From Macrostomum lignano (Eukaryota), in the NCBI GenBank assembly GCA_002269645.1, contig NIVC01002166.1, positions 1-64,000 on the forward strand: a stretch of 64,000 nucleotides of DNA. Direction: 5' to 3'. A program made the translations under genes and the position numbers. Positions within the stretch are counted from its first letter, which is position 1. Every line of letters starts with the position of its first letter. The notes beneath the pieces were generated by a model that ran no database searches, was not told the DNA's origin, and saw nothing but the letters and a program-made list of their open reading frames with translations. Shown one piece after another: positions 1,017 to 55,810 of this stretch.

Positions 1017-2644
1017 TCAGTTCCCCAGACAGGCCAACCCCCGTCTGCACCTCAGTCTCAATGAGTTGAGCATTCCGCACACCTGCTGTTTGAAAAACCT
1101 GTTCATACAGCCGTAGATGACCGGGTTCACTCCGTGGTTGATGAAGTAGAAATAGTACACTGTCTGCATGAACAGCCCGCCCAGGCCCACGTGGCTGCCC
1201 TCGTCGCTGCTGCTCCCTCCTTCTGACCCGCTGGAGCCGCTGCTGTACAGCCTCCGCCACCAGCTGCTGTTCTGCTGCTGGCTGTAGTTGCCTCCGGATG
1301 CCGCCGCCGAGCTCCAGTTGCCGAAGCTTGCCGCGGCAGCTTGGTACGACTGCCAGTCGCTTAAGTTGATGCCTCCAGTCGTCGCGCCGCCCGACCTCCG
1401 GCGGCCCGGCCTCTTGCAGGTGGAACACCAGAAAGAAGGGCAAATAAGAGAGCAGATAAAAGAAAGTGATGATGCTCAACACCTTGGCTGTTTTTTGTGC
1501 GGCCGCTTCCTAGTCCGCTCTGACAGGTGCTTCTGCGCCTGCGCCAGGCGGTTGCTCACCACCGAGTCTTCGCGACGCTGGCTGCCGACCAGCATTCGGC
1601 GCTGCTCGGGCGCCTCTTCGTCAGCTTCTTCTTCACGTCTCGGCTCGGCCTCCTGGCTGTTACCGTCATCATCGGCCACGCTGATTTCCTTGTTGGCAAA
1701 CTTCACCGCACAGCTTGAGGCGGCGGCTTCTTGCCGCCCAGTGCCTGGTCGATGTCCGTCTCTAGGATGCCGTTGTTCTGCCTGTCCGGCTGGCAGTCGT
1801 TGATTCTGTTGATGCCGTCGGCATTGGTATTGTTGGCTATTGAGCTGCGGCCAGCCTTGCCCTTGTCCTTGCTTGTCCTTGGCGTTGGAGACGCGGCTGA
1901 CGTAGCTTCGCGATTTGTCCCAGCGACGCGCTGCCGCTTGCGCACGAAGTAGAAAATATTGGCGTAGAAAAACATAATAGCCAGCAGCATGCACAGGAAC
2001 AGCAGTGTCAAGCAGGCCTTGTACACCCTGACGGTGATCATTGGCAGGATGCTGTAGTCGGCGATGCAGTGAGCCATGGTGACCGGCCGGCTGAGGACTC
2101 GGCCGGGCAGTTTCACAATCACTGTCCGCCTGGTGCCAGTCGTCAATCCAAGCGGGGTGCCCACGGCGAAGCCCAGCAGCAGGGTGAGGCCGATGAGTCG
2201 CACGGCCTGTCGCCGGCCGGTCTGAATGCCGGGCACGAAGCAGATGATGGCGAAGCGGTCCACCGCGATCAGGCAGAGCAGGAAGGCGGATGACGTCACC
2301 AGAGAGCAGCGGAGAATGTGAAAGATTTTGCACATGAAGTCGGTGGTGGCGGCCCGCCAGACGTCCTGATAGATGGTTGACGGAATGACAACAGAACAGA
2401 CGGTCAGGTCCAGCGTGGCCAGCGCGATCACGTACACATTCTGGGGCAGCTCGCGAAGTCCCCTATGAAAGAAGAAGACAACAAGGATGTTGCCAAACAG
2501 GCCGATCAGGGCCAGAGCGCCCAGTGACAGTGTGATGGCTACCGACATGGCCAGGGGCAGCTCGCCGCCCTGCTGAGTGGCCTGCATCATCTGGCTTAGT
2601 TGGGAGTCCCGGATACTGCTGTTGCTGCTCATAGTGAACTTCAT
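1017..2644 (-). CDS. Rhodopsin-like (class A) GPCR, orphan/peptide-receptor type; coding region intronless but broken by three +/-1 frameshifts (assembly error or pseudogene)
   Basis: ORF 1703..2950 gives TM1-5 (GLFGNILV, LATLDL, DRF). A frame change at ~1705 gives an acidic ICL3 ending RKRPHKK. A change at the T-run 1491-1496 gives TAKVLSIITFFYLLSYLPFFLVF (TM6). A change at ~1390 gives a S/G-rich ECL3 and TM7 YFINHGVNPVIYGCMNRFF, with TGA at 1019-1017. Start at 2644 (MKFTMSS) or 2632. Confidence 0.88.
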
Positions 2645-2754
2645 TTCTGCTGTGTTGCTTCTGCTGCTGTTTGTTGGCTTTTCTTCTGTGGAAGGTTTTG
2701 GCAAAAGAGAAATCTGTATGTAGAGATTGTAGATATGTATATGGAGTAGAGATT

Positions 2755-3014
2755 CTGCCCATTCCTCTGACTCGAGCACATGCAAGCGCGCCAACACAGT
2801 ACACAGGCACGCAATGTACACACGCTCACACAGGGTGTACAGCGGTCCTGACTGTCTAATCGTCAGGCATGTGCCTTGAAGGCTGACCCTCATGGCTGTG
2901 AATCGCACGACAACCCCCCACCTGTCAATTTTTGAGCTCACGAGCCCCAAAACGGAATCGAACTTGGGGTCGCGCGCGAGTCAGACTTGTTTAACGTTGA
3001 GCTGCTCTGGCCCC
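2755..3014 (-). mobile_element. tRNA-derived SINE-like element, most complete copy
   Basis: Minus strand head GGGGCCAGAGCAGCTCAACGTTAA (A-box-like) ... AAGTTCGATTCC (B-box-like). The body has a CCTGAC-N9-GTCAGG hairpin and CAGGGTGTAC, and is homologous to 5 other copies in the window. Confidence 0.65.
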
Positions 3015-4004: not shown

Positions 4005-4125
4005 GAGTCGAGCACGCGTGCTCATACAGGGTGTACATGGGCCCTGACTTCCTCATCATTAGTAGGAATGTACACACCCCGTGCCTTAGGCTAGAGCTGC
4101 ACAAGCCCCGAGGCAAGTTGAACGA
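4005..4125 (-). mobile_element. Diverged partial copy of the SINE-like family
   Basis: cagggtgtacatgggccctgact ... gagctgcacaagcccc ... gttgaac is colinear with 2820-2965. Confidence 0.5.
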
Positions 4126-5008: not shown

Positions 5009-5209
5009 GCCTCGGAAAAGCTAAAGAAGCGAATGAACTCGGGGGTCTTACCGGTGCCAGAAACTGTGGAGCTCGTTCGAGTATCGCTACCACTTGACCG
5101 CTTTATTTGTAGCTTTGGGTACCACAGATCGATAAACAGAGATGCCAAAATCCGAATTTGGACATGCAATAAATTGAGTCCCCGCAGTAAGAGACCGTAT
5201 AGACACGGC
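5009..5209 (-). ncRNA. Spliced-leader (SL) RNA-like sequence, interrupted (probable SL RNA pseudogene or variant)
   Basis: Minus 5209->5163 reads GCCGTGTCTATACGGTCTCTTACTGCGGGGACTCAATTTATTGCATG and ends in ATG like flatworm SL exons. GGTAAGACC (5052-5044), which can pair with GGTCTCTTAC, lies ~110 nt further on. Homologous to 54852-54948. Confidence 0.6.
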
Positions 5210-5604
5210 TCGCTTGAATATCGCTAGGTTAGATTGAAGAGCTAGGCACGGGCGCGGAGCGGAGAGCGGGGAGCTGGCTGGGCCAGGCTTGAGCACTCCA
5301 CTTAACAGGGTAGAGGGGCAGACAACGCGAGAGAGAGAGAGAGATGCCAAACAAAAGAGACGACCCTTCAGCCAATCAGCGTGCCCGCCGAGCAGATCTG
5401 ATTGACTGGGGGCCAGAAAAGAAAACCACAAAAACACAAGCCCAGCCAATCAGCGACCGCCGCGGGAAAGACTCAAGCCGGGCTGAGCGCCCCCCCCCCC
5501 AACCAGCCAGAACTGGTCTGGGGATGGCCGCCTAGGGCGCACATAAAAAACAACTCAAAAAGTGCAAGAGCACTCAACAGGCCAGACACTACATACGCGT
5601 GGAG

Positions 5605-5790
5605 CAGACCAGCTCAGCGGTGAACACAGCCATGAGGGCCAGCCCCAAGGCACAGATAGTGTACATGCTTGAGGATTAGAAAGTCAGGACCGCAGTACAC
5701 CCTGTGCGAGCGTGTGTATGAATGCAGTGCCTGCGTACTGTATTGGTGCGCTTGTGTGCGCTCAGGTCAGGAGTCAGTGGAATGGGCACA
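5605..5790 (+). mobile_element. Copy of the SINE-like family
   Basis: cacagccatgaggg ... gattagaaagtcaggaccgcagtacaccctgtg ... gtactgtattggtgcgcttg ... gagtcagtggaatgggca is the reverse complement of 2755-2910. Confidence 0.7.
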
Positions 5791-6299
5791 ATTGGTTCGC
5801 CCGTATCTCTTTTTTTGGCAACCATTGTCCGTCTTCTGTCCCATTCTGTGTTTCGCCTCTTGTCTTCCGTCTTCTACCCCTCTATATTGCTTGCTGCCTC
5901 TCTTTGCACCTTTCCCTCCCTTCTCCTCTGTTGTCAGTGGATAAACTTGGCCTTGATTTGAGCCCCCTTGTAGTGAAATTCGAATGCCTTATAGAAACTC
6001 CTGACTGGCTGCAGTTTGACATTGATTTTGCGTCAAAACCAGAACGCGGACACAAGGAATACGAACTGATTGAACTGTCGTAAAACTGGACAAAAAAGTT
6101 AAAAAGGAAGTTTGCCACACGGACAGGCCGACAGGGCAGGGTTAAAGTAACGACCTGCTTGCTTAGGGGCATGGAACCAATTCATTCATCACCAATATTA
6201 AAGCTGGAAGTGCAGCTCTGAAGGTCATTGGAAAACTGCAAAGCTGTGGGAGAGTGGCTTAAACTCTCTAGGCCATGACTGGTCAGCATCCTGTAGTTG

Positions 6300-6941: not shown

Positions 6942-7665
6942 GTCACACCAAGCGTCACCCCAGAGAGTCACACCAAGCGTCACCCCAGAGTCACACCAAG
7001 CGTCACCCCAGAGAGTCACACCAAGCGTCACCCTCCAGCGAGTCACACCAAGCGTCACCCCAGAGAGTCACACCAAGCGTCACCCTCCAGCGAGTCACAC
7101 CAAGCGTCACCTCAAAGAGTCACACCAAGCGTCACCCCAGAGAGTCACATCAACCGTAACCCCACAGAGAGTCACACCAAGCGTCACCCCAGAGAGTCAC
7201 ACCAGGCGTCACATCAGAGTCACACCAAGCGTCACCCCAGAGAGTCACATCAACCGTAACCCCACAGAGAGTCACACCAAGCGTCACCCCAGAGAGTCAC
7301 ACCAGGCGTCACATCAAAGAGTCACACCAAGCGTCACCCCAGAGAGTCACATCAACCGTCACCCCAGAGAGTCACATCAACCGTCACCCCAGAGAGTCAC
7401 ATCAACCGTCACCCCAGAGAGTCACATCAACCGTCACCCCAGAAAGTCACATCAAGCGTCACCCCAGAAAGTCACACCAAGAGTCACCCCAGAGAGTCAC
7501 ATCAACCGTCACCCCAGAGAGTCACATCAACCGTCACCCCAGAGAGTCACATCAACCGTCACCCCAGAGAGTCACATCAACCGTCACCCCAGAGAGTCAC
7601 ATCAACCGTCACCCCAGAGAGTCACATCAACCGTCACCCCAGAGAGTCACACCAAGCGTCACTCA
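6942..7665. repeat. Intronic minisatellite, ~25-bp unit GAGAGTCACACCAAGCGTCACCCCA
   Basis: Visible tandem array. It accounts for the repetitive N-terminal part of ORF 6940..8685. Confidence 0.93.
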
Positions 7666-7701
7666 GCGTCACTCAAATCAAGTTTCTCTTTGCGCCCGCA
7701 G

Positions 7702-10700
7702 GCTGACAGCTCCGGCGACGCGCCGCAGTCAGCCAGCTGGTCATTCGACGAAGTCAAGGAGGTGCACCTTCGCCGCTACGAGCTCCGCGACAACGCCCTC
7801 GAGATTTTTCTGGCCAACGGTGCCGCCTACCTGCTGGCGTTTCAGTCGCCTCGCGATCGCGACGAAGTGGCCCGCGTGGTGGACGGCCTGGAGTTGGACA
7901 GCCGCGTCCGCCAGCTCACAGTTGACGAGGCCCAGCGCCAGTGGGTCACCGGCCAGATGAGCAACTTCGAGTACTTGGCCTTCCTCAACACGGCCTCTGG
8001 CAGGTCCTACAACGACCTCATGCAGTACCCCGTGTTCCCCTGGGTCCTGGCCGACTACGACTCCGTCGAGCTGGACCTGACCCAGCCGGCCACCTTCCGC
8101 GACCTCGCTAGGCCGATCGGCACCCAGGACGACTCGGCCGTGGCCCGGCACCGGGACAAATACGAAGTGCTGGACAGGCAGTACAGGGAGCTCGGACCGG
8201 ACCACGCCACGCCGCCCTATCACTATTCGAGTCACTATTCGAACTCGGGCACCGTGCTGCACTACTTGGTCCGCCTGCCGCCCTACACCCAGCTGTTCAC
8301 CGTGTACCAGGACCGGCACTTCGACCTGCCCGATCGGACTTTTCACTCCATCCGAACCAGCTGGCGCTTGAGCTCGAAGCTGTCGGACTCGGACGTCAAG
8401 GAGCTCATTCCGGAGTTCTTCTGCCTGCCGGAGTTTTTTATCAACAGCGAGGAGCTCGACTTCGGCGTCAAGCAGTCCGGAGTTCGAGTTGACAATGTCG
8501 AACTGCCGCCCTGGGCCGCCGATGATCCGCGCCGGTTCGTCCTCATTCACCGGGCCGCCCTGGAGTCGCCGCTCGTCACTGAGAAACTGCACAAGTGGAT
8601 TGACCTCATCTTCGGGTACAAGCAGACAGGTAATGTTCGGCTTGCTTGCTATGGGATTGAGGATCTGGGGGGATTATGGACTTAGGTGGAGATTGGGGAT
8701 CTGGGTGGAGATTGGGGATCTGGGTGGAGATTGGGGATCTGGGTAGAGATTGGGGATCTGGGTGGAGATTGGGGATCTGGGTTGAGATTGGGGATCTGGG
8801 TTTAGATTGGGATCTGGGTTGAGATTAGGGACTTGGGTTGAGATTGGGGATCTGGGTTGAGATTGGGGATCTGGGTTGAGATTGGGGATCTGGGTTGAGA
8901 TTGGGGTTCTGGGTTGAGATTGGGGATCTGGGTTTAGATTGAGGATCTGGGTTGAGATTAGGGATCTGGGTTTAGATTGAGGATCTGGGTTGAGATTGGG
9001 GATCTGGGTTTAGATTGGGGATCTGGGTTTAGATTGGGGATCTGGGTTGAGATTGGGGATCTGGGTTGAGATTGGGGATCTGGGTTTAGATTGGGGATCT
9101 GGGTTGAGATTGAGGATCTGGAGAAGAGATTGAGGATCTGGATATGATATTGAGGATCTGGGGATGACATTGAGGATCTGGAGAAGAGATTGAGGATCTG
9201 GAGAAGAGATTGAGGATCTGGATATGATATTGAGGATCTGGGGATGACATTGAGGATCTGGAGAAGAGATTGAGGATCTGGAGAAGAGATTGAGGATCTG
9301 GGGATGAGATTGAGGATCTGGGGATGAGATTGAGGATCTGGGGTGAGATTAGGGATATGGGGATGAGATTAGGGATCTGAGGATGAGAATAGGGATCTGG
9401 GTTGAGATCGAGGATCTGAAGGTGAGATTGAGGATCTGGGTGAGATTGAGGATCTGTGGGTTAGATTGAGGATCTTGGGGTGAGATTGAGGATCTTGGGG
9501 TGAGATTGAGGATCTGGGGGTGAGACTGAGGATCTAGGGGCGAGATTAGGCATCTGGGGGGAGATTGAGGATCTGGGGGTGAGATTATCCGATAGCTAAA
9601 TCTGCCTAAAAACTTTGTCGTCTCCTCTTAAACGCGCAGGCAAGGCGGCGCTCAGCTCGGTGAACCTGTTCCACCCGTACACCTACTTCGGCGCCATCGA
9701 CCTGGACCAGATCGACGACCCGGTGCGGCGCCGCGCCATCGAGACGATGATCAAGACGTACGGCCAGACGCCTAAGCAGCTGTTCCGATCGCCGCACCAG
9801 CCGCCTGTGGCAGCGGCGCCTCGCTCTGGCCGGGTGCCCGGGGCTTTCGGCGTTCGATTTGGAAATTATTGCGGCTCGCCAGACTGCCAGGCCCCGCCCC
9901 AGGTGCGCTGCCGGGATGGGGCCAGCTGGGGCCGGCCTGTGTGGTGCTTCTGCCACTACAGGATCCGTGATATTATACTGGATCACCTTCCCAGATCCTC
10001 AGTTGCTGGGCCAGCTATCAACCTCCCAGATCCTCAGTTTCTGGGCCAGCCTCCCAGATCCTCAGTTTCTGGGCCAATCTCCCAGATCCCTAGTTCCCTA
10101 GTTTCCGGGCCAGCCTCCCAGATCCCCAGTTTCTGGGCCAGCTTCCCAGATCCTCAGTTTCTGGGCCAGCCTCCCAGATCCTCAGTTTCTAGGCCAGCCT
10201 CCCGGATCCTCAGTTTCTGGGCCAGCCTCCCGGATCCTCAGTTTCTAGGCCAGCCTCCCGGATCCTCAGTTTCTGGGCCAGCCTCCCGGATCCTCAGTTT
10301 CTGGGCCAGCTTCCCAGATCCTCAGTTGCTGGGCCAGCCTCCCAGATCCTCAGTTTCTGGGCCAGCTTCCCAGATCCTCAGTTGCTGGGCCAGCCTCCCA
10401 GATCCTCAGTTGCTTGGCCAGCCGTCAACCTACCAGATCCTCAGTTTCTGGGCCAGCCTCCCAGATCCTCAGTTTCTGGGCCAGCCTCCCGGATTCTCAG
10501 TTTCTGGGCCAGCTTCTCAGATCCTCAGTTTCTGGGCCAGCCTCCCAGATCCTCAGTTTCTGGGCCAGCCTCCCAGATCCTCAGTTTCTGGGCCAGCCTC
10601 CCAGATCCTCAGTTTCTGGGCCAGCCTCCCAGATCCTCAGTTTCTTGGCCACTGCCAGCCTCTCAGATGCTTAATCCCCTCTCTTCCGCTGGACCACAGG

Positions 10701-12568
10701 TTGCCTGGTGCGAGCAGCTGGCGGCCCCGGTGGCCCAGCTGGTGTTGAACCGTCGCCTGTCGGTCCGAGCGCTCCGGAGGTGCTCGGCCTGTGCCCCGGC
10801 ACCTGCGCCCTGGCCGGCGGCCAGCTGCTGGTCGGCGCCGCTGACAATGTTTTCCGCTGGCGCCCGGCGCCAACCTCGGCAAGCGCCAGCGCCGGCGCTG
10901 GACAAGCGCTGGGCGCGCCTCCGCCGGACTGGCTGGGCGACCGGGTCACCGCGGCCGCTGCCTGCGGATGGCGCGTCTTCTGCGGCCTCCGCTCCGGCCT
11001 GCTGCGCGTGTTCTCCGTAGCCGCCTCGTCCACCGGCTCCGCCGCGCCCGCCTCGTCCTCCGCGTCCGGGGCCCGCGGCCGGGCCGGCGGCCGGATCGAC
11101 TGGCTCGGCGAGGCGCCCGTGCCGCTGCTCGGCCACCGGTCGGCGGTCACCGCGGCGCACGCCTGCCCGGAGTTTGCGCTGCTCGCCACTGGCGACGCCG
11201 CCGGCCGCGTGCTGCTGTGGGACACTAACCAGGTGGCCTACGTGCGCTGCCTGCGACCTTCTGGTCCGCCCGTGGCCGCGCTGACCGCGTCGCCGACTCT
11301 GGCAGATGTGGCCGTGCTCGGACAGGTAAGGCTGAAGATCAAATAGGAGTCAGACTCAGTTAGGTTCAAGTTCATGTAGGCTGGTTAGAGTCAATGTCGG
11401 GTAGGTTCAAGGCTGGGTTGGGTCAAGGTCGGGTCGAGCCAAGATCGGGTAGGGTTAAGGTCGGGTAGGGTCAAGGTCTTGTAGGGTCAAGGTCGGGTAG
11501 GGTCAAGGTCTTGTAGGGTCAAGGTCTTGTAGGGTCAAGGTCGGGTAGGGTCAAGGTCGGGTAGGGTCAAGGTTGGGTAGGGTCAAGGTCTTGTAGGGTC
11601 AAGGTCGGGTAGGGTCAAGGTCTTGTAGGGTCAAGGTCTTGTAGGGTCAAGGTCGGGTAGGGTCAAGGTTTGGTAGGGTCAAGGTCGGGTAGGGTCAAGG
11701 TCTTGTAGGGTCAAGGTCTTGTAGGGTCAAGGTCGGGTAGGGTCAAGGTCGGGTAGGGTCAAGGTCGGGTAGGGTCAAGGTTTGGTAGGGTCAAGGTCGG
11801 GTAGGGTCAAGGTCGGGTAGGGTCAAGGTCTTGTAGGGTCAAGGTCCGGTAGGGTCAAGGCCGGATAGGGTCAAGGTCGGGTAGGGTCAAGGTCGGGTAG
11901 GGTCAAGGTCGGGTAGGGTCAAGGTCTTGTAGGGTCAAGGTCGGGTAGGGTCAAGGTCGGGTAGGGTCAAGGTCCGGTAGGGTCAAGGTCGGGTAGGGTC
12001 AAAGTCCGGTAGCGTCAAGGTCGGGTAGGGTCAAGGTCCGGTAGGGTCAAGGTCGGGTAGGGTCGAGGTCGGGTAGGGTCGGGTGAGCTGCTTTAATATT
12101 TATTACCCAATTAATTCCGTGCTCCACGGGCCGCAGGGCCAGGGCAGCCAGCTCACGGTGTACACCGCCAACGGAGCCCTAGTCGGTTCAGTCAGCAGCG
12201 GCGGCGGAGGTGGCGGCGGCGACCGGATCACCTGCGCCGTGTACAGCTCCCTGCCTGAGGGCCGCTTCATCAACTGTCTGGCAGTGGGCCTGAGCTCCGG
12301 CTGCGTCCGCCTGCTCAACAGCTGGGACCTGGGCGACCTGGCCTTCATCCGGCCCGGCTTAGCCTCGCCGGCGCCGCTCCTGGCGCTCGCCTTCTCGCGC
12401 GACTGTCGCCGTTTGTACGCGTCGGATCGGGACAATCGGGTCTTTGTGCTGGAGGCGCCGGTCGACCCCTACCTCAGCGGCGGAGGCGGCTCCGGAGGCG
12501 GCGGCGGCGGCGGAGGCGGCGGCATGGGTCAGAAAACTTCCAAGCAGCAGTTCGCCGCCTTCCTGTGA
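7702..12568 (+). CDS. LYST: Lysosomal trafficking regulator (LYST/CHS1): PH-BEACH-WD40 C-terminal part; the 5' exons lie upstream of the window
   Basis: Exons 7702-8629, 9640-9902, 10700-11325 and 12137-12568, all GT-AG and phase-compatible. LYST-type BEACH motifs: GRSYNDLMQYPVFPW, HYSNSGTVLHYLVR, DVKELIPEFF, WIDLIFGYKQ, RRAIETMIKTYGQTPKQLF. WD40 tail PEGRFINCLAVGLSSGCVRLLNSWDL. One apparent missing G near 10744. Confidence 0.93.
8660..9585. repeat. Intronic minisatellite, ~19-bp G-rich unit AGATTG(G/A)GGATCTGGGTTG
   Basis: Visible tandem array filling LYST intron 8630-9639. Confidence 0.93.
9985..10665. repeat. Intronic minisatellite, 28-bp unit GGGCCAGCCTCCCAGATCCTCAGTTTCT
   Basis: Visible tandem array in LYST intron 9903-10699. 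Confidence 0.93.
11400..12082. repeat. Intronic minisatellite, 16-bp unit GGGTAGGGTCAAGGTC
   Basis: Visible tandem array in the last LYST intron. Confidence 0.93.
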
Positions 12569-15256: not shown

Positions 15257-27444
<12,188 letters not shown>

Positions 27445-34209: not shown

Positions 34210-36858
34210 ACGAGAATCATTGAGAACAGTATCTACGTGTGTACCGAAATAATCTCAGCTTGGCTTGTTTTTATTAACTCCAAAAGCTTGATCAAGAGCG
34301 GCCGCCAATTATCGTTGTGCCTTTTTGTTCGCTTGCATCGCTCTGCACCTCTCTGTCCATATACATGTAATCTTCAGTACCTGTATATTCTCTGATTATT
34401 TGCTAGAAGACATTATGAATCTCATATGCATCTTTAAATTATTTACGATATTCTCTACCTAAAAGCAATTGCTAAAATATGCTAATTCATTTTACATTTA
34501 ATCAATCTTTACAAGCTGCTTATAATAACAAAGTTTTTATCCTTGTTTCCCTCAATGACTATACCTCATAAACGCGATACTCAACAAGTCATTCTTGGAG
34601 GCCCTCTCTTCATTCGTATTTATCGATCTGTATCAATGACTATGATTGATTGCAGCACATTTAATGATACATGTAGCTAAATATAGCTTTTAGCAACTGC
34701 ATCTACGTCTTGCTTGTATCTTGCACTTGTGCTGCACAAGTCCAAAAGAAAAATTCACATATGCTTTATTTTAATAATACCAATAATTCATTTAACCTTT
34801 GACTTACTTGACTTCATTTAATTATTTCATTAATTCATTTAACCTCATTACCTCATTGTAATTTTAGGTCACTTTAGAGTAACTAATTACTCGACTCTGA
34901 ACTCAATTGAGTTGTACTCTCAAGTTGACCGAAATTAAGGCTGGGAGTCTGTGACCAATGGTCCCAACAACACGAGTGCAGCACGTTACAACTCTACTCT
35001 AAGATCAACCATATGCTAACCCTAACTGTGACATCACTTAGCACCTTTGCTGAAGCAAAGGAATTGCATTTTTCTTACAAAAGTTGTTAAAGCTTCCTTT
35101 CCGAAATTTTTTTCATGCATGATGCATCTATTTTGTTAAAGTTTGCTTTTGATTTGTATACGAGCTCGTGGTTCAAAAATTAAACTTTGTTGTTTCAGAG
35201 AAACGGAGTAAATACTTATAGCCCATAATTTTTACAGCACTAATGTAATTTTTTACCATAAAAGTTAATAAGATAGAAAGCACCCATTTAACATAAAAAA
35301 ATTAACTAGAGTGGCATTTCACTCGCTCTACCAAAACTTAAGTTTTAATGCCCATAGAAATAGGCCTAGTCAAAAGAAGGAAAACATTTTTCACATAAAT
35401 TTCAGACGTTCAGGGAAGAAAATGGCAGCTGCAGCGGGGAAAAGGGAAGTTAAGGGCAGGGTTGTGCAAAAGAAGAGACATGACAAAGCTTGTTTGCTAG
35501 CATCATTAAAAATAAAAATATACAAAATCTAATTCATAGGGTAATAGCCAGATTAATTTTTACTATTGAACATTAACAACATGACATAAGTATTTTAAAT
35601 ATAAATTTGCACAATCTATTACTTAATGACCTATTTCATATCAAAACAAAAAGGCAAATTAGACCAAATTATTAAATATTAGGCTTATTTGATATAGGAA
35701 ACTTCCTAATCCTAGCATTGTCTTTAATTAGACAGAAACTTTCTCTTTTAGTTTTAAGTAGTCTAATAGGCCTGCATAAAGCATGTAGCTATATAACTTT
35801 TAAAGGTAAAAATAAAATGAAATAAATTTTAGAAAGTTTATGTAGTATTAATGTTAGTAGTAAATAAGATTTAGAGTCCAAATTTTGTCTTTATTTAAAC
35901 TAAAAGAAAACAAAAAGTTAGCAGCCTATTTTATCTCCTATGGCCATGGGTCAAAGGTATTATAATGCTATGTTATTTTAGCAAAAATAAAATATATTGC
36001 TAGATGCTATTAAATGCTTATATAATATACCATGAATTTACAAGTAGTATAAAAAGTTGTCTATTTTATGCATTTATAAAATGAGTAAGTATGTTTTTAT
36101 TAGCTAATTTTAGTCTATATAGCCAAAAATATTACTAGGATTAATTGGAATAAATTATTACTATTATTTGGTTTTGTCGCAACATTTTATAATTCTATTA
36201 ATATTATAAAAAAAATATTTTATTAAATTTTATCATAGTTAACAGATTGAATATTTTAGAAGTGCTTAGACTTATAGATAAACATTTCTATAGAAATAGT
36301 ACCTAGTTATTTATAAGCCTAATGCCCTTGACCATGCTTGTATGTATACCAGTATATGCTTTTATATATTTGTTTTGTATTTATCTAAGAGAAGAAATAA
36401 AATCTATATTATCTTTCTATTGTAACTTTGGTATGGTTAATGGTAATAGAGTAAAGTAGAATCCTAGCAATTAGGATCACTGATGAATTAGGCATTTCAA
36501 TGTTTTTATTGCTAGGGCCTAATATATATTTAATTGAGAATAGAAACAATTTTTTACTTTAACATAGATCAATCTTTGTTGCCAACTAAAAGTCTTTCAT
36601 TAAATTGCAACAGCACAAAAAAACCTGTTTAAGCTATCACAGCATGCCGCAGTAAGTCACAGTTGTCAATGACAAATTATGGTTTGAAACAGAAACCCAG
36701 TCTGAACCATAAAACTCAGTTTAGCACCTTAGCTAATTTGCACTTATTGAATTCATGCTCTTGCTGCACATTAGTGCAAATGTGTGCACTCTTGGCAAGA
36801 CCTGGCCCAGTGTGACTCACAACTCTGCATATTTGACACTTAAGTCGCTCAGCCCAAG

Positions 36859-39800: not shown

Positions 39801-42187
39801 TTTTCAGATCCCTCAATTAGATTGAAATCCCATATTTCAGATCCCTTAATTAGATTGAAATCCCCTCTATCAGATCCCTTAATTAGAATGAAATCCCATA
39901 TTTCAGATCCCCTAATTAAGTCCTTGCTTTTAGATGCTCAGCAGCTCAGGTCTAACTAATATCGCAAAGTTCCGCCTTCCCTAATCCGCAGCGCACCTTA
40001 GAGTACTTCCTCCAGACAGAGGATTACCGCCTCTCTCTAGACGAGCAATTTGAATTCGTCAATCTGTGGTTCGTGCTGATCATGCTCAACGACCTGCTTA
40101 CCGTCGTTGGTTCGATTCAGAAAATTTTAATCGAATATAAGGTGTGTTCTTTGGGTAGAATTTTGACACTTGCTACTTACGTAAACTAGTAGCTATATAT
40201 GTGTATAAATTTTTGCCAATTTTCAGGTTGGCAACAATGACAATTACATCACCTGCGGCCTGTTCCTCGGTGGCGGCGCTATGCTAGTGTGGTTGGGCAC
40301 GCTTCGATATTTGAATTACTTTGCCAAATACAATGTGAGTTTTGTAAAGTGATAATTTGTACTTTGCACTTTGTGTCTTTTGATCACTAGTGTGTCTTTG
40401 TTCCTTTGATCAGTACTGTACTTTGTGTCTTTTGATCAATAGTGTGTCTTTGTTCCTTTGTTCAATAGTGTGTCTTTGTTCCTTTGATCAGTACTGTACT
40501 TTGTGTCTTTTGATCAATAGTGTGTCTTTGTTCCCTTGATCAATAGTGTGTCTTTGTTCCTTTGATCAATAGTGTGTCTTTGTTCCTTTGATCAATAGTG
40601 TGTCTTTGTCCCCTTTGATCAATAGTGTGGGTTTGTTGGCCTCTGGTGCACCGCCTTTGGCGACATGGTCCCACAACCAGCGCTGAGGCAGCTCTGCCCA
40701 ATCCGCAGACTCCTGAGCGCATGCAAGCGCACCAACACAGTACGCAGGCACGCAATCACACACTCGCTCACACAGGGTGTACAGCGGTCCTGACTTTCTA
40801 ATTGTCAGGCGCTTTGTTGCAGTGCTGTATTAATTTGAGCTACAGTGGGTCTTTGTTTTTATTTGTGTAGCCATGCCCTTTCAACTCTCGCCCGCCACCC
40901 CTTCTTACCCAGGTGCTGCTGCTGACCATCAAGCGCAGCCTGCCGGACATCATCCGCTTCCTGGTGTGCGCCGTGGTGCTGTTCCTGTCCTTCTCCCTGT
41001 TCGGCTGGATCACCTTCGGGCCTTATCACGCCAAGTTCCGCGGCTTCTTCATCACCCTGGAGTGCCTGTTCGCGCTGGTTAACGGAGATGACATCTTCAA
41101 TACGTTCGCCATGCTGCCGCAGGACACCACCAACACCTACATCTATGTGGTGTCGCGCATCTATCTGTACTCATTTATATCGCTGTTCATCTATATTGTG
41201 CTCAACGTGTGCATCTCTATTATAATAGAGGCGTACGAGACTGTCACGGTAAGGCTGATTTAAGCGATTTGTAAATATTCCATAGTCAATTAAGCTAAGT
41301 ATCCACTGAATACTCGCTGAATACTCGCTGAATACTCGCTAAATACCCGCTGAATACTCGGTAAATACCCGCTGAATACTCGCTGAATACTCGCTAAATA
41401 CCCGCTGAATACTCGGTAAATACCCGCTGAATACTCGGTAAATACCCGCTGAATGAGCTGAATACCCGCTGAATGAGCTGAATACCCGCTGAATGAGCTG
41501 AATACCTGCTGAATGAGCTGAATACCCGCTGAATGAGCTGAATACCCGCTGAATGAGCTGAATACCCACTGAATGAGCTGAATACCCACTGAATGAGCTG
41601 AATACCCGCTGAATGAGCTGAATACCCGCTGAATGAGCTGAATACCCGCTGAATGAGCTGAATGCCCGCTGAATGAGCTGAATACCCGCTGAATGAGCTG
41701 AATACCCGCTGAATGAGCTGAATACCCGCTGAACGATCTATATGTCACCTAAAGTCAGTCCGGCAGTCCAGCTAACCGAGTCCGCGCTCCCCAACCCCCG
41801 ACAGCACCGCAGTGGTCTGACGCAGCCCTCCCGCCTGTGGCAGTTCATCGCCGAGTGTGCCGACCCGGCCAGCTCCGTCGCTTATCGACACGACGCCGCC
41901 GAACGCGCGGCGGCCGCCGCCCGGCCCTTCAGCTGGCTGATGCGCGCCCTTCAGTCCTCCCTGGTGTCCCGGGTTCGATTCAACCGGCATCGAACCGCTG
42001 GCGGCGTCGGCGGCGTCAGGGAGTTCAATGTCAACGATAGCGATGAACTCGGAGGTGGCGGCGGCAGCGGAGACATCGGCGGCGATGGCCGCGGCGGCAG
42101 GAGACGCAGCGAGAGTCTGGCCTCGCCTTGGGACGCCGACAATCTGGGCGGTAGCGGCGGATTCGACTATGGCAGACTGTCGTCTTT

Positions 42188-46268: not shown

Positions 46269-46442
46269 ACTGCAGCTGGGATAACCTTGAATTGACTGAT
46301 AGGTGGGTGCAGGCTGATTGCTTTGCACTTTGTTGCTTTGAGAAGGTCTGCTAATCTGTTGCCTAAATGTCATGTGATGTGATGTATATTCGCCTTACCA
46401 ATGAGTTAGCGGAAAATTATGGTTAAGGTTTAAAGTTATATT

Positions 46443-46830
46443 CCAGCCAATCAGAGACGAGATCAGTCTAGCTTAGAGCAAGCATCCAGCCAATCAGAAA
46501 CGAGATCAGTCTAGCTTAGAGCAAGCATCCAACCAATCAGAGACGAGATCAGTGTAGCTTAGCTAGCTTCCAGCCAATCTGAGACGAGATCAGTCTAGCC
46601 TAGCTAGTTTCCAGCCAATCAGAGACGAGATCAATCTAGCTTAGCTAGTTTCCAGCCAATCAGAGACGAGATCAGTCTAGCTTAGCTAGTTTCCAGCCAA
46701 TCAGAGACGAGATCAGTCTAGCCTAGCTAGTTTCCAGCCAATCAGAGACGAGATCAGTCTAGCCTAGCTAGTTTCCAGCCAATCAGAGACGAGATCTGCC
46801 GTCTAGATTAGTTTTTCCAGCTAATCAGAA
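46443..46830. repeat. Tandem repeat, ~41-bp unit containing AGCCAATCAG
   Basis: About 9 copies of CCAGCCAATCAGAGACGAGATCAGTCTAGC. Confidence 0.9.
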
Positions 46831-53645: not shown

Positions 53646-54851
53646 ACGCCAAACAGCCGGGGCCTCTGATATCGAATGTCAGACTGGCCCAGTTGAGTAT
53701 AAATTAGCCATTGCCCGATGAAAATCGCAGGCAGGCTGTTGTGCGCAGCTTCCTGTTATTTCTGCTCGATGCTTTCAGGTGCAAATAATTGTAAGCCATA
53801 AAAGCGGAGGATTTACGCTGCTTTTAGCTGATGGGGACGGACCGGCATCCTTCATCATGCTTGCTTGGGATCGAGTGGAGTTGTGGGTGCCCGGGTTTGC
53901 AGATCAAACGAGTGGCAGCCCACATCTCCTTAATTGAGTTATCAACACGGCTGCCCCTGTGCTCAGATATCGCCGATTTGCAATAAATATCCCATATCCC
54001 CATTTTTTGCTTCTCCTCCCATGGGGTCCCGGCCGGTTTCAGACCCCCCAGTAAAAGGCTTGTAGGGGAATGATGACGAGAGGCGTCAAATAAAGATGCT
54101 AACAAAATCGGCAGATCAGCAGACAGCTCAGAGCTAATTATTCGTTCCGGTCAAGCGCGGGTTGTTAAAGTGCGCCCAAATGCAGCAGAGGCTGAATCAA
54201 TATTTCAAGTTTGCACTAATTTATTTTTGGCCCGCTTGCGTGTTTGCCATCGCCTGCCTGCTACAGTCAGCATTGCTATTATTACCATGATGACTCAAGC
54301 CCGATTGCTGCGGAGTCCGGGCTTGAGCACGTGTGTGGGCGGCTGCTCTCGGTTGCTGGGAGACCGACAGTAGAGAAAGGAAACTAGCAACGTCGCTGAC
54401 AATACCATCCGGTTGCTACGAGAGTTTCAAACTCCTATGAAGAGACGAAGAGCCACTGTGTCTCGTAAAGTGGCGATCGATACCGGATCCGGAATGGTAA
54501 AGATTCTATTTTAATCATAGATTCATAGACCAGGAAGTTCAACCATAGACAATCAATCCTGGCGCTGGAGAGGAGATTGCAACTGAAAGCTACGAGTATA
54601 ATAGTTGCCACTATAAAAAAACAAAAAAATGAATTTCTTTCACCTTAGACCTAAAGGTGATTTTGCCATAGAAAAAATCAATTCTGTTCGCTTGATCGTG
54701 AAAGACTGATCAATTGACGTATTCTCACCGATTGGGGCTACGTAAATTAAAATTGCTACTCAACTCCAACCTGAGCACCGCACTTACAAGGGGGGCTTCA
54801 GGACGCACCCACACAAGGCTTCACCAGAGTCTGGACGCAGTGGTACAGCCT

Positions 54852-54948
54852 GGGGCTGGCACACATTGGCCGGTACGCCTCGGTAAGCTCTGGCGGGTCT
54901 TAATTCGATTGCTCTAGATTGAGTTAAGTAAGAGACCGTCTTTCCGGC
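54852..54948 (-). ncRNA. Degenerate SL RNA-like gene copy
   Basis: Minus strand reads GCCGGAAAGACGGTCTCTTACTTAACTCAATCTAGAGCAATCG-AA-TTAAGACCC...AGCTTACCGAGGC...AATGTGTGCCAGCCCC. The ~97-nt length and motif order fit an SL RNA, but the ATG, donor and Sm site are decayed. Confidence 0.55.
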
Positions 54949-55810
54949 TAGCAAGGAGAGAAAATCAAGACGTGAACACGACACCACACCCCAACACACG
55001 GCGTCAGTAATTAAATATCTACGGCCCGCGGAGGGGGAGGCCAACAGCCCTCCAACCCACCACCCCATCGATCCCAACCCGCGCCAGCCAACCACACCGC
55101 CAGGGGGGGAGGAAACACCGATCCCCCCGCCGCTCGGCCCAGCCAATCAGAACGCAGTAAGCAACAAATAGTACAGAAGCTGAACGATAAGTCATAGTAA
55201 AAAAACGCCCGGCTTGAACCAATTGATGCATGTGGGGACAAACTGAGTCAACCTGGCACTGAAACAAAAGTGCATGCAGAAAACAACAGTAATAAAAGTA
55301 TTGAGTGCAAGTTTCACTAATAGATCGATAAAATTGACTCTTAGTCACTCAGAAGTTAGCAATGGAAAATCTTTTTTAAAATGAACATTACTACGCCTTT
55401 ACACTTTCATTAAGCCTGGAGACGAAAAAAGCTTTAATGTTTCAAGCAATTTAGCCAGCCCATCTTGGTCTGGGGGATAGATTGGCATTGTACGTATTGA
55501 GGCAATGCTGCCAGTGTTTGTACTACAGCCGGGTAGGGACCGAGAGAGTTTCCAATTGGTGAAAAGGTGCCTTCGCAACCAACGCCCTTGAAGCTAATTT
55601 TTTGTTTGCTACGTCAATCAGGGCCAAAGCCAGTGGGAGCCGGGGCGGGCGGCCTCCTCACTCCGCCGCCCTCTCGTCCCCCCCCCCCCCCCGGCGGGTC
55701 AGATTGCGTGTATTTAAGCTGCGGCACGGGCCGCCCCAGCTGCCCTTACGCCACCAGCTCAGCCGGCACCAGCTCAGGCGCAACACTCGACAGCTACTCT
55801 CGAACCCGAC

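What the first reader, a model, noticed from the sequence alone, without database searches (positions are those of the whole stretch)
5009..5209. Spliced-leader exon separated from its donor-like partner by a ~110-nt insert
Seen: minus 5209->5163 is a 47-nt GCCGT...ACGGTCTCTTACTGCGGGGACTCAATTTATTGCATG. It is followed by TCC, not GT. GGTAAGACC (complementary to GGTCTCTTAC) and AGCTTTTCCGAGGC come ~110 nt later, and the same two motifs directly follow the exon-like part of the second copy at 54.9 kb. Established: flatworm SL exons end in AUG and pair with the downstream GUAAG donor in stem-loop I. From memory, and needing verification, the Macrostomum lignano SL is GCCGTAAAGACGGTCTCTTACTGCGAAGACTCAATTTATTGCATG, which differs at only 2 of the last 36 nt. 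Inference: a dispersed SL RNA gene copy with an insertion exactly at the trans-splice donor. It could be the footprint of an SL-targeting element (as NeSL and SLACS/CRE do in nematodes and trypanosomatids), or a variant that donates a longer leader ending at the displaced CG|GTAAG.
Basis: partly seen in the sequence, partly recalled or inferred. Interest (0 to 1): 0.75.

Follow-up and report, generated by a model that had tools for sequence, protein, structure and literature searches.

The report
Spliced-leader relic, not an interrupted gene
A near-perfect copy of the Macrostomum flatworm spliced leader sits here as a dead relic, most likely left by re-insertion of a trans-spliced RNA and not by a mobile element splitting a leader gene; this is an ordinary kind of genomic fossil.

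Summary
The sequence facts hold. Minus 5209->5163 is a 47-nt copy of the Macrostomum spliced leader. It matches 34 of the last 36 nt, the 5' GCCGT is kept, and the hairpin loop is changed. TCC follows it. GGTAAGACC lies 110 nt further on, and AGCTTTTCCGAGGC follows.

I recovered three real Macrostomum-type SL RNA genes from public contigs (L001-L003). They share a conserved intron: GTAAGACACCG, stem-loop II, an Sm site and stem-loop III. They also share the upstream context CTCTTT.

The window locus has none of this except GTAAGAC.CC. Its similarity to SL RNA runs exactly from RNA position +1 to the trans-splice junction, which is the part transferred to mRNAs. The leader plus the next 73 nt is bracketed by an imperfect 19-nt direct repeat. 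AATAAA ends 12 nt before the second repeat copy. There is no poly(A).

Best reading (about 0.5): a leader-only relic from an inserted copy of a short trans-spliced RNA. The interrupted-gene reading survives as a rival (about 0.2), because a donor-like 10-mer this close has a chance probability of about 0.5%.

Nothing supports an SL-targeting element or a working long-leader RNA. The copy at 54.9 kb is another dead SL relic. Interest is low.

The parts
5163..5209 (-). Spliced-leader exon relic (copy 1), 47 nt. The 5' GCCGT and 34 of the last 36 nt match the Macrostomum SL. The loop is AAAG->GTCTAT and there is an AA->GG change. It ends in ATG and no GT follows.
   Evidence: nhmmer E 2.6e-8; the alignment stops at the exon end. 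SL sequences come from PMC10468722 and PMC8629364.
5090..5162 (-). 73-nt non-SL segment joined directly to the leader's ATG. This is the putative body of the trans-spliced RNA. A 20-codon ORF runs from the leader AUG, and its stop lies inside AATAAA.
   Evidence: No other copy in the window. No Rfam or tRNA match.
5102..5107 (-). AATAAA hexamer. It ends 12 nt before the second direct-repeat copy.
5208..5226 (-). Direct repeat copy 1, TAGCGATATTCAAGCGAGC. It abuts and overlaps by 2 nt the first base of the leader.
   Evidence: It matches copy 2 at 16 of 19 positions, and all 3 mismatches are transitions. 4 of 3000 shuffles reach this score, but 3% of real non-tandem-repeat control sites do.
5071..5089 (-). 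Direct repeat copy 2, TAGCGATACTCGAACGAGC.
5042..5052 (-). Donor-like G|GTAAGACCCC. It matches 9 of 10 positions of the start of real SL introns (GTAAGACACC) and is complementary to exon GGTCTCTTAC.
   Evidence: Chance of about 0.5% at this distance. 1 of 37 independent GTAAG-anchored control segments scores higher.
5009..5022 (-). AGCTTTTCCGAGGC. It resembles AGCTTACCGAGGC of copy 2 and is absent from real SL RNA genes. It is not an Sm site flanked by stem-loops.
   Evidence: (171 of 2000 shuffles match as well).
54840..54948 (-). Copy 2, a degenerate SL relic. 21 of its first 22 nt match the SL, and the 3' half of the exon has decayed (ACTCAAT is kept). It is followed by AATTAAGACCCG with no GT anywhere nearby, so it cannot donate a leader.
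   Evidence: nhmmer E 4.7e-4, model positions 1-43. Fold z -0.7.

Best explanation
Copy 1 is a dead, leader-only relic. A short RNA that had already received the spliced leader by trans-splicing was copied back into the genome at this site. That RNA was the 47-nt leader plus about 73 nt, ending shortly after an AAUAAA signal. The insertion duplicated about 17-19 bp of target DNA.

The copy then decayed. The loop changed, AA became GG, and the flanking repeat picked up 3 transitions.

On this reading the GGTAAGACC 21 nt beyond the second repeat belongs to the pre-existing flank, and its likeness to an SL donor is coincidence.

Shown:
- The leader identity.
- The exact extent of the similarity to SL RNA.
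- The absence of the SL intron and of the promoter context.
- The direct repeat and the AATAAA.

Inferred:
- The RNA-mediated origin.
- The exact ends of the inserted piece.
- That the locus is inert.
For: 1. Similarity to SL RNA runs exactly from RNA +1 (GCCGT) to the trans-splice junction (ATG), which is the part carried by mRNAs (nhmmer).

2. Four real SL RNA gene copies from three independent contigs share these features:
- A 45-nt exon.
- GTAAGACACCG.
- TGATCCAAT..TGGATC (stem-loop II).
- AUUUUU(A)G (Sm site).
- AGCCC..GGGCU (stem-loop III).
- C/TTCTTT immediately before +1.
L001 and L002 fold with z -3.5 and -4.4.
The window locus lacks the upstream context (AAGCGA) and the intron. With the 110 nt removed in silico, the profile alignment extends only 12 nt into the intron (44.9 against 31.4 bits). 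One unrelated GTAAG segment of the window does better. That joined sequence folds with z -0.5.

3. A 16-of-19 direct repeat brackets the leader plus 73 nt, and copy 1 of the repeat ends at the leader's first base. AATAAA ends 12 nt before copy 2.

4. GC content dips to 0.43-0.49 in the bracketed piece, against 0.60 upstream.

5. Leader-only loci are common in flatworm genomes and are ascribed to re-integrated trans-spliced transcripts: 597 such loci against 312 SL-RNA loci (PMC12582326).
Against: - There is no poly(A) tract between the AATAAA region and the second repeat.
- The direct repeat is weaker evidence than the shuffles suggest. 3% of real non-tandem-repeat sites in this repeat-rich window show an equally good nearby repeat.
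- A 9-of-10 match to the SL intron start lies 110 nt after the leader on the same strand. This has a chance of about 0.5% and the retrocopy model does not explain it.
- With permissive gap costs the downstream piece is weakly like SL introns and like copy 2 (p 0.005-0.03).
- A 12-mer, TTTGGCATCTCT, occurs both upstream (5351) and inside the 73 nt (5149).
- No parent locus could be searched for, because the species' genome and transcriptome are not in the available collections.
Confidence: 0.5

Rival explanations
1. Interrupted SL RNA gene or pseudogene. A DNA-level copy of an SL RNA gene, possibly of a divergent lineage shared with copy 2, took a 110-111-nt insertion exactly between ATG and GTAAG.
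For: - GTAAGACCCC matches the real intron start at 9 of 10 positions and pairs with exon GGTCTCTTAC (chance about 0.5%).
- The downstream piece is weakly similar to L001 and L002 introns and to copy 2 when gaps are cheap (p 0.026, 0.005 and 0.009).
- TTTAGC lies roughly where the Sm site would be.
- The CCAAT-type box CTGATTGGCTGGGC lies upstream of both copies.
Against: - Between L001 and L002 the 102-nt gene alignment has 97% mean column identity, and L003 keeps the same intron elements. Here only 12 nt of intron align, while the exon keeps 34 of 36.
- Stem-loops II and III and an Sm site flanked by stems are absent.
- The conserved upstream CTCTTT and ACTGCCATAG are absent.
- The insertion would have to hit one exact bond.
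- This model does not explain the direct repeat that starts at the leader's 5' end, nor the AATAAA.
- The CCAAT box also occurs 7 times in a tandem array at 46.4 kb.
Confidence: 0.2
2. SL-derived first exon of a live gene. The leader plus 110 nt is transcribed as a 157-nt 5' exon. Its CG|GTAAG donor is used in cis, for example onto the rhodopsin-type GPCR gene 2.1 kb downstream on the same strand. This is compatible with a retrocopy origin of the leader.
For: - The 110 nt ends in a consensus donor (CACCG|GTAAGA).
- CCAAT boxes lie at -170 and -244.
- A 7tm_1 ORF lies on the same strand at 2950->1703.
- A leader-plus-gene sequence was once mistaken for the M. lignano SL RNA (PMC8629364).
Against: - No expression data are available.
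- The leader AUG opens only a 20-codon ORF.
- GTAAG occurs 40 times in the window.
- Nothing links this exon to the GPCR.
Confidence: 0.1
3. Local duplication or rearrangement. The 'insert' is a diverged partial duplicate of the locus's own upstream region, within a decayed tandem array of about 200-nt units.
For: - Colinear matches link the upstream region and the insert: TTTGGCATCTCT at a spacing of 202 nt and TAGCGATA.. at a spacing of 137 nt.
- The 202-nt blocks align with z 3.4 for 5351-5150 against 5149-4948, and z 3.4 for 5149-4948 against 4947-4746.
- The window is about 38% tandem repeats.
Against: - The two spacings disagree.
- The sub-segments between the anchors are not similar (z about 0).
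- The exon itself is not duplicated.
- The scores depend on permissive gap costs.
Confidence: 0.1
4. Footprint of an SL-targeting mobile element, or a working SL RNA that donates a 157-nt leader.
For: Only the position of the extra DNA at the exon end and the downstream GTAAG.
Against: - The insert is 110 nt, with no RT or endonuclease and no Pfam hit.
- It has no terminal repeats or poly(A), and no second copy in the window.
- The only two hits to the translation are tandem-repeat proteins, which I judged spurious.
- The long RNA folds no better than shuffles (z +0.75) and its best fold does not form stem I.
- No Sm site is flanked by stem-loops.
Confidence: 0.04

Closest known systems
Leader-only SL loci in flatworm genomes (Evolution of SL-RNA Genes... 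in Parasitic Flatworms, PMC12582326)
   Same: The genomic locus's only SL-RNA feature is the leader sequence. It has no donor, Sm site or stem-loops. Such loci are interpreted as re-integration of transcripts that had been trans-spliced.
   Different: Those loci were mostly tied to LTR and LINE elements and carried partial leaders. Here the leader is full length from +1, no transposon is recognisable, and the host is a free-living macrostomid.
Relict DinoSL tags on dinoflagellate retrogenes (PMC6050394, PMC5585692, PMC12014239)
   Same: A DNA-encoded spliced leader at the 5' end of a retroposed transcript serves as the mark of RNA-mediated origin.
   Different: Dinoflagellate relicts sit upstream of working genes and are re-trans-spliced. 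Here the attached body is only about 73 nt with a 20-codon ORF, and function is unlikely.
Canonical Macrostomum SL RNA gene (109 bp, PMC8629364; L001, L002, L003 here)
   Same: The leader exon is the same: GCCGT...ACGGTCTCTTACTGCG..GACTCAATTTATTGCATG.
   Different: Missing here are the donor straight after ATG, stem-loop II, the Sm site, stem-loop III and the upstream CTCTTT context.
SL-RNA pseudogenes (loci with lost AUG or donor, PMC12582326)
   Same: A non-functional SL-related locus with a lost donor. Copy 2 at 54.9 kb fits this better than copy 1.
   Different: Those pseudogenes keep the rest of the SL RNA. Copy 1 keeps only the leader.
   Same: Foreign DNA associated with an SL exon.
   Different: Those are multi-kb elements encoding reverse transcriptase. 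They insert at a fixed site inside the exon and are present in many SL gene copies. None of this holds here.

Membership tests
Functional flatworm (Macrostomum-type) SL RNA gene | Leader exon matching the genus SL and ending in AUG | tested here: met
   34 of the last 36 nt match, and the 5' GCCGT is kept (PMC10468722, PMC8629364).
Functional flatworm (Macrostomum-type) SL RNA gene | GU donor (GTAAG) immediately after the exon | tested here: not met
   ATG is followed by TCC. The nearest GTAAG is 111 nt away.
Functional flatworm (Macrostomum-type) SL RNA gene | Stem-loop II, Sm site and stem-loop III downstream of the donor | tested here: not met
   The profile alignment stops 12 nt into the intron. 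Fold z is -0.5 without the insert and +0.75 with it, against -3.5 and -4.4 for L001 and L002.
Functional flatworm (Macrostomum-type) SL RNA gene | Conserved upstream context (C/TTCTTT at -1; ACTGCCATAG at -54/-73) | tested here: not met
   Caution: the context was defined from other species' genes (L001-L003).
Functional flatworm (Macrostomum-type) SL RNA gene | The leader variant is found on mRNA 5' ends | not testable with these tools
   No RNA-seq of the species is available. All known Macrostomum leaders have AA and not GG.
SL-targeting non-LTR retrotransposon (NeSL/SLACS/CRE) or its footprint | Encodes, or derives from, a reverse transcriptase/endonuclease element | tested here: not met
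   The insert is 110 nt. There are no Pfam hits for ORFs across it. The only two hits to the translation are tandem-repeat proteins, which I judged spurious.
SL-targeting non-LTR retrotransposon (NeSL/SLACS/CRE) or its footprint | The same insert recurs at the same site in other SL gene copies | tested here: inconclusive
   It is unique within the 64-kb window, and copy 2 has no insert. The whole genome could not be searched.
Retrocopy of a trans-spliced RNA (SL relict) | SL similarity spans exactly the mature leader (+1 to the splice junction) and is followed by non-SL sequence | tested here: met
Retrocopy of a trans-spliced RNA (SL relict) | Target-site duplication flanking the copy | tested here: inconclusive
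   A 16-of-19 direct repeat starts at the leader's 5' edge. 4 of 3000 shuffles match it, but 3% of real genomic control sites do.
Retrocopy of a trans-spliced RNA (SL relict) | Poly(A) signal and poly(A) tail at the 3' end | tested here: inconclusive
   AATAAA ends 12 nt before the second repeat (met). No A tract is present (not met).
Retrocopy of a trans-spliced RNA (SL relict) | A parent locus elsewhere with an SL acceptor in front of the 73 nt | not testable with these tools
   The species is absent from the searchable collections.

The most novel reading that the evidence does not exclude
Copy 1 and copy 2 belong to a divergent SL-like gene lineage marked by TAAGACCC...AGCTTxCCGAGGC. Copy 1 was hit exactly at its trans-splice donor by a site-specific insertion. 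That would be the first hint of SL-gene targeting, or of an extended-leader SL RNA, in a flatworm.
Probability: 0.1. Interest if true: 0.6.

Novelty: new member of a known kind. Interest (0 to 1): 0.22.

Why it matters
The main value is for annotation. A leader-like sequence followed some way off by a GTAAG is not an SL RNA gene. The M. lignano SL RNA was once mis-assigned in a similar way (PMC8629364).

If the retrocopy reading holds, it adds a free-living flatworm example of a trans-spliced RNA being written back into the genome. The leader would then act as a built-in tag of RNA-mediated origin, as in dinoflagellates.

The three SL RNA genes recovered here give a usable definition of the Macrostomum-type SL RNA: exon, donor, stem-loop II, Sm site and stem-loop III. 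Future candidates can be tested against it.

Tried and rejected
- Rfam at gathering thresholds over the whole window, Rfam at E<=10 around the locus, and ARAGORN all found nothing relevant.
- Exact look-ups of the two ORFs spanning the locus found nothing on record.
- A homologue search with the neighbouring GPCR found nothing at E<=1e-20, so the species and its close relatives seem absent from the protein collection. An orthologous empty-site test was therefore impossible.
- The viral-contig scan for the leader gave 0 hits.
- The covariance model built from two genes was too weak to be decisive. Its best window hit, at 34847-34941, is hairpin-driven and not SL-like in sequence.
- An exhaustive HMMER search with the 69-aa translation through the leader, the insert and the flank returned only two proteins made of tandem repeats, which I judged spurious.
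- A search for target-site duplications or poly(A) further downstream found only 7-8-mers at chance level.
- A tRNA or SINE origin for GTCAAGTGGTAGCG...CTCGAAC was considered and dropped, because ARAGORN and Rfam found nothing.
- The inverted ~170-bp repeats at 2752-2900 and 5625-5792 were considered as transposon ends around the locus. I rejected this because the same repeat is scattered through the window.

Full report
OBSERVATION

On the minus strand, 5209->5163 reads GCCGTGTCTATACGGTCTCTTACTGCGGGGACTCAATTTATTGCATG. TCC follows. GGTAAGACC sits at 5052->5044, exactly 110 nt later, and AGCTTTTCCGAGGC at 5022->5009.

M. cliftonense has GCCGTAAAGACGGTCTCTTACTGCGAAGACTCAATTTATTGCATG. M. hystrix and M. 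lignano are identical over their reported lengths (PMC10468722 Table S3; PMC8629364).

The window copy keeps GCCGT and 34 of the last 36 nt. It has AA->GG and a different hairpin loop (AAAG->GTCTAT). The match is far beyond chance: blastn E 9e-11 and nhmmer E 2.6e-8.

The second copy (minus 54948->) reads GCCGGAAAGACGGTCTCTTACTTAACTCAATCTAGAGCAATCGAATTAAGACCCGCCAGAGCTTACCGAGGCG. So the 'same two motifs' are only approximately the same, and copy 2 has no GT.

WHAT A REAL GENE LOOKS LIKE

Rfam has no model that hits here. I therefore looked for real genes in public collections.

- A metagenome scan for leader plus GTAAG gave L001.
- A scan of prokaryotic genome bins gave L002, evidently a flatworm contig inside a Flavobacteriaceae MAG.
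- A protein-space search with the antisense ORF over the L001 gene gave L003. It carries two copies 1165 nt apart.

All share these features:
- The 45-nt exon. L003 has loop ATAG.
- GTAAGACACCG directly after ATG.
- TGATCCAAT(NN)TGGATC (stem-loop II).
- AUUUUU(A)G (Sm site).
- AGCCC-loop-GGGCU (stem-loop III).

These features are shown. L001 and L002 fold far better than shuffles, with z -3.5 and -4.4.

The flanks of the three loci are otherwise unrelated, so the intron is under strong constraint across species. Immediately upstream of +1 all have C/TTCTTT. L001 and L003 also share ACTGCCATAG at -73 and -54. This agrees with the published description of the 109-bp M. lignano gene, whose GTAAG donor lies directly after the leader (PMC8629364).

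TEST OF THE INTERRUPTED-GENE READING

If copy 1 were an SL RNA gene split by an insert, removing the insert should restore a gene. It does not.

- The joined sequence aligns to the three-gene profile only through intron position 12 (GTAAGAC.CC), scoring 44.9 bits against 31.4 for the exon alone.
- I joined the same exon to every other GTAAG in the window as a control. One of 37 independent segments scores higher.
- Strict local alignments of the downstream 80 nt to the L001 intron or to copy 2 are no better than shuffles.
- With cheap gaps there is a weak signal, p 0.005-0.03.
- The joined RNA folds with z -0.5. The native 225-nt RNA folds with z +0.75 and does not form stem I.
- The upstream CTCTTT and ACTGCCATAG are missing.

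An exon at 94% identity next to an intron at background level is not what neutral decay of a gene copy gives. No canonical SL RNA gene exists anywhere in the window.

WHAT ELSE IS AT THE LOCUS

Similarity to SL RNA begins exactly at RNA position +1 and ends exactly at the trans-splice junction. That is the part carried by mRNAs.

A direct repeat brackets the leader plus the next 73 nt. One copy is TAGCGATATTCAAGCGAGC (5226->5208) and the other is TAGCGATACTCGAACGAGC (5089->5071). They match at 16 of 19 positions, and the three differences are all transitions. The first copy ends at the leader's first base.

AATAAA (5107->5102) ends 12 nt before the second copy. The bracketed piece is somewhat lower in GC than its flanks.

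Taken together, this is the anatomy of an inserted copy of a short, trans-spliced, 3'-processed RNA with a target-site duplication.

Caveats:
- There is no poly(A) tract.
- The repeat beats 2996 of 3000 shuffles, but 3% of real non-tandem-repeat control sites in this very repetitive window do as well.
- The donor-like 10-mer is left as a coincidence of about 0.5%. GTAAGACACC with at most 1 mismatch occurs 4 times in 128 kb of both strands, and two of those are simply the antisense of the two leaders.

COPY 2

21 of its first 22 nt match the leader. The 3' half has decayed: it carries a 4-nt gap, and ACTCAAT is kept.

TAAGACCCG follows 3 nt after the exon-like part. CCAAT and CAGCCC..GGCT lie roughly where stem-loops II and III would be, at p 0.002-0.011 with cheap gaps. 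There is no GT and no U-tract.

It looks like a decayed copy of an unspliced SL RNA. Its similarity also starts at +1, with no CTCTTT before it. It cannot donate a leader.

CONTEXT

- The locus lies between a rhodopsin-family GPCR ORF (minus, 2950->1703) and a PH-BEACH/BEACH/WD40 gene (plus, about 7.7-11.3 kb).
- About 38% of the window is tandem repeats.
- A ~170-bp dispersed repeat flanks the region in inverted orientation, but it also occurs at four other places.
- The CCAAT-type box CTGATTGGCTG lies upstream of both leader copies. It also occurs seven times in a 41-nt tandem array at 46.4 kb. I give it little weight as a shared promoter.

VERDICT ON MECHANISM

Best (about 0.5): a leader-only relic made by re-insertion of a trans-spliced RNA, now inert.

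Rivals:
- An SL RNA (pseudo)gene interrupted at the donor: about 0.2. It is kept alive by the 10-mer and the weak gapped similarities.
- An SL-derived first exon whose GTAAG is used in cis, for instance for the downstream GPCR: about 0.1. This is compatible with the same origin.
- A local duplication in a decayed ~200-nt periodic region: about 0.1.
- A targeting-element footprint or a working 157-nt-leader SL RNA: about 0.04.

COMPARISON AND NOVELTY

Leader-only loci ascribed to re-integrated trans-spliced transcripts outnumber true SL-RNA loci in parasitic flatworm genomes, 597 against 312 (PMC12582326). DNA-encoded leader relicts are the standard tag of retrogenes in dinoflagellates (PMC6050394, PMC5585692).

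This locus is a new example of that kind, in a free-living macrostomid. It fails the membership tests for a functional SL RNA gene and for an SL-targeting retroelement.

Interest is low. The practical lesson is for annotation.

Noticed in passing
window 54840-54948 (-): A second SL relic. 21 of its first 22 nt are canonical, including the AAAG loop, and the rest is much more diverged (1 of 22 against about 10 of 23 differences). This uneven decay is unexplained. It has no GT donor.
   Followed up: partly
window 2752-2900, 4020-4090, 5625-5792 (inverted), 19643-19753, 27181-27221, 40695-40810: A dispersed ~170-bp repeat family at 72-90% identity (MITE- or SINE-like). Two copies flank the SL locus in inverted orientation. 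In ORF lists it reads as ...SGPLYTLCERVY....
   Followed up: partly
window 46441-46796; also 5369-5379, 5443-5453, 55140-55150 (all -): The CCAAT-type 11-mer CTGATTGGCTG occurs 10 times against 0.1 expected. Seven are in a 41-nt tandem array, and the other three lie upstream of the two SL relics.
   Followed up: partly
window, whole: Extreme tandem-repeat load: 51 TRF rows, about 38% of bases, periods 10-221 nt. Several arrays stay open in long ORFs, for example 6942-7662 inside the ORF that continues into the PH-BEACH domain.
   Followed up: no
window 5351-4746 (-): Weak periodicity of about 202-204 nt across three consecutive blocks, with z about 3.4 for neighbouring blocks. Anchors include TTTGGCATCTCT (5351/5149) and AGAGCGTCRTCACGCCTGC (4982/4778). 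This may be a decayed tandem array.
   Followed up: partly
L002 (JAGQZA010000190.1, 'Flavobacteriaceae bacterium' MAG), 1589-1692: A complete Macrostomum-type SL RNA gene sits in a contig of a bacterial metagenome-assembled genome. The contig is almost certainly flatworm contamination of the bin.
   Followed up: partly
L003 (Ga0450804_1231195), minus 3363->3257 and about 4528->4422; L001 596-614: L003 carries two SL RNA gene copies 1165 nt apart with identical promoters. L001 has a partial duplication, GCCGTAAACTCTTT, just upstream of its gene, and a Na/K-ATPase beta-subunit gene 1.1 kb downstream.
   Followed up: partly
window 1703-2950 (-) and 7700-11350 (+): A rhodopsin-family GPCR ORF (7tm_1, E 1.4e-22) and a PH-BEACH/BEACH/WD40 gene. 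The GPCR had no homologue at E<=1e-20 in the 5.8-billion-protein collection.
   Followed up: partly
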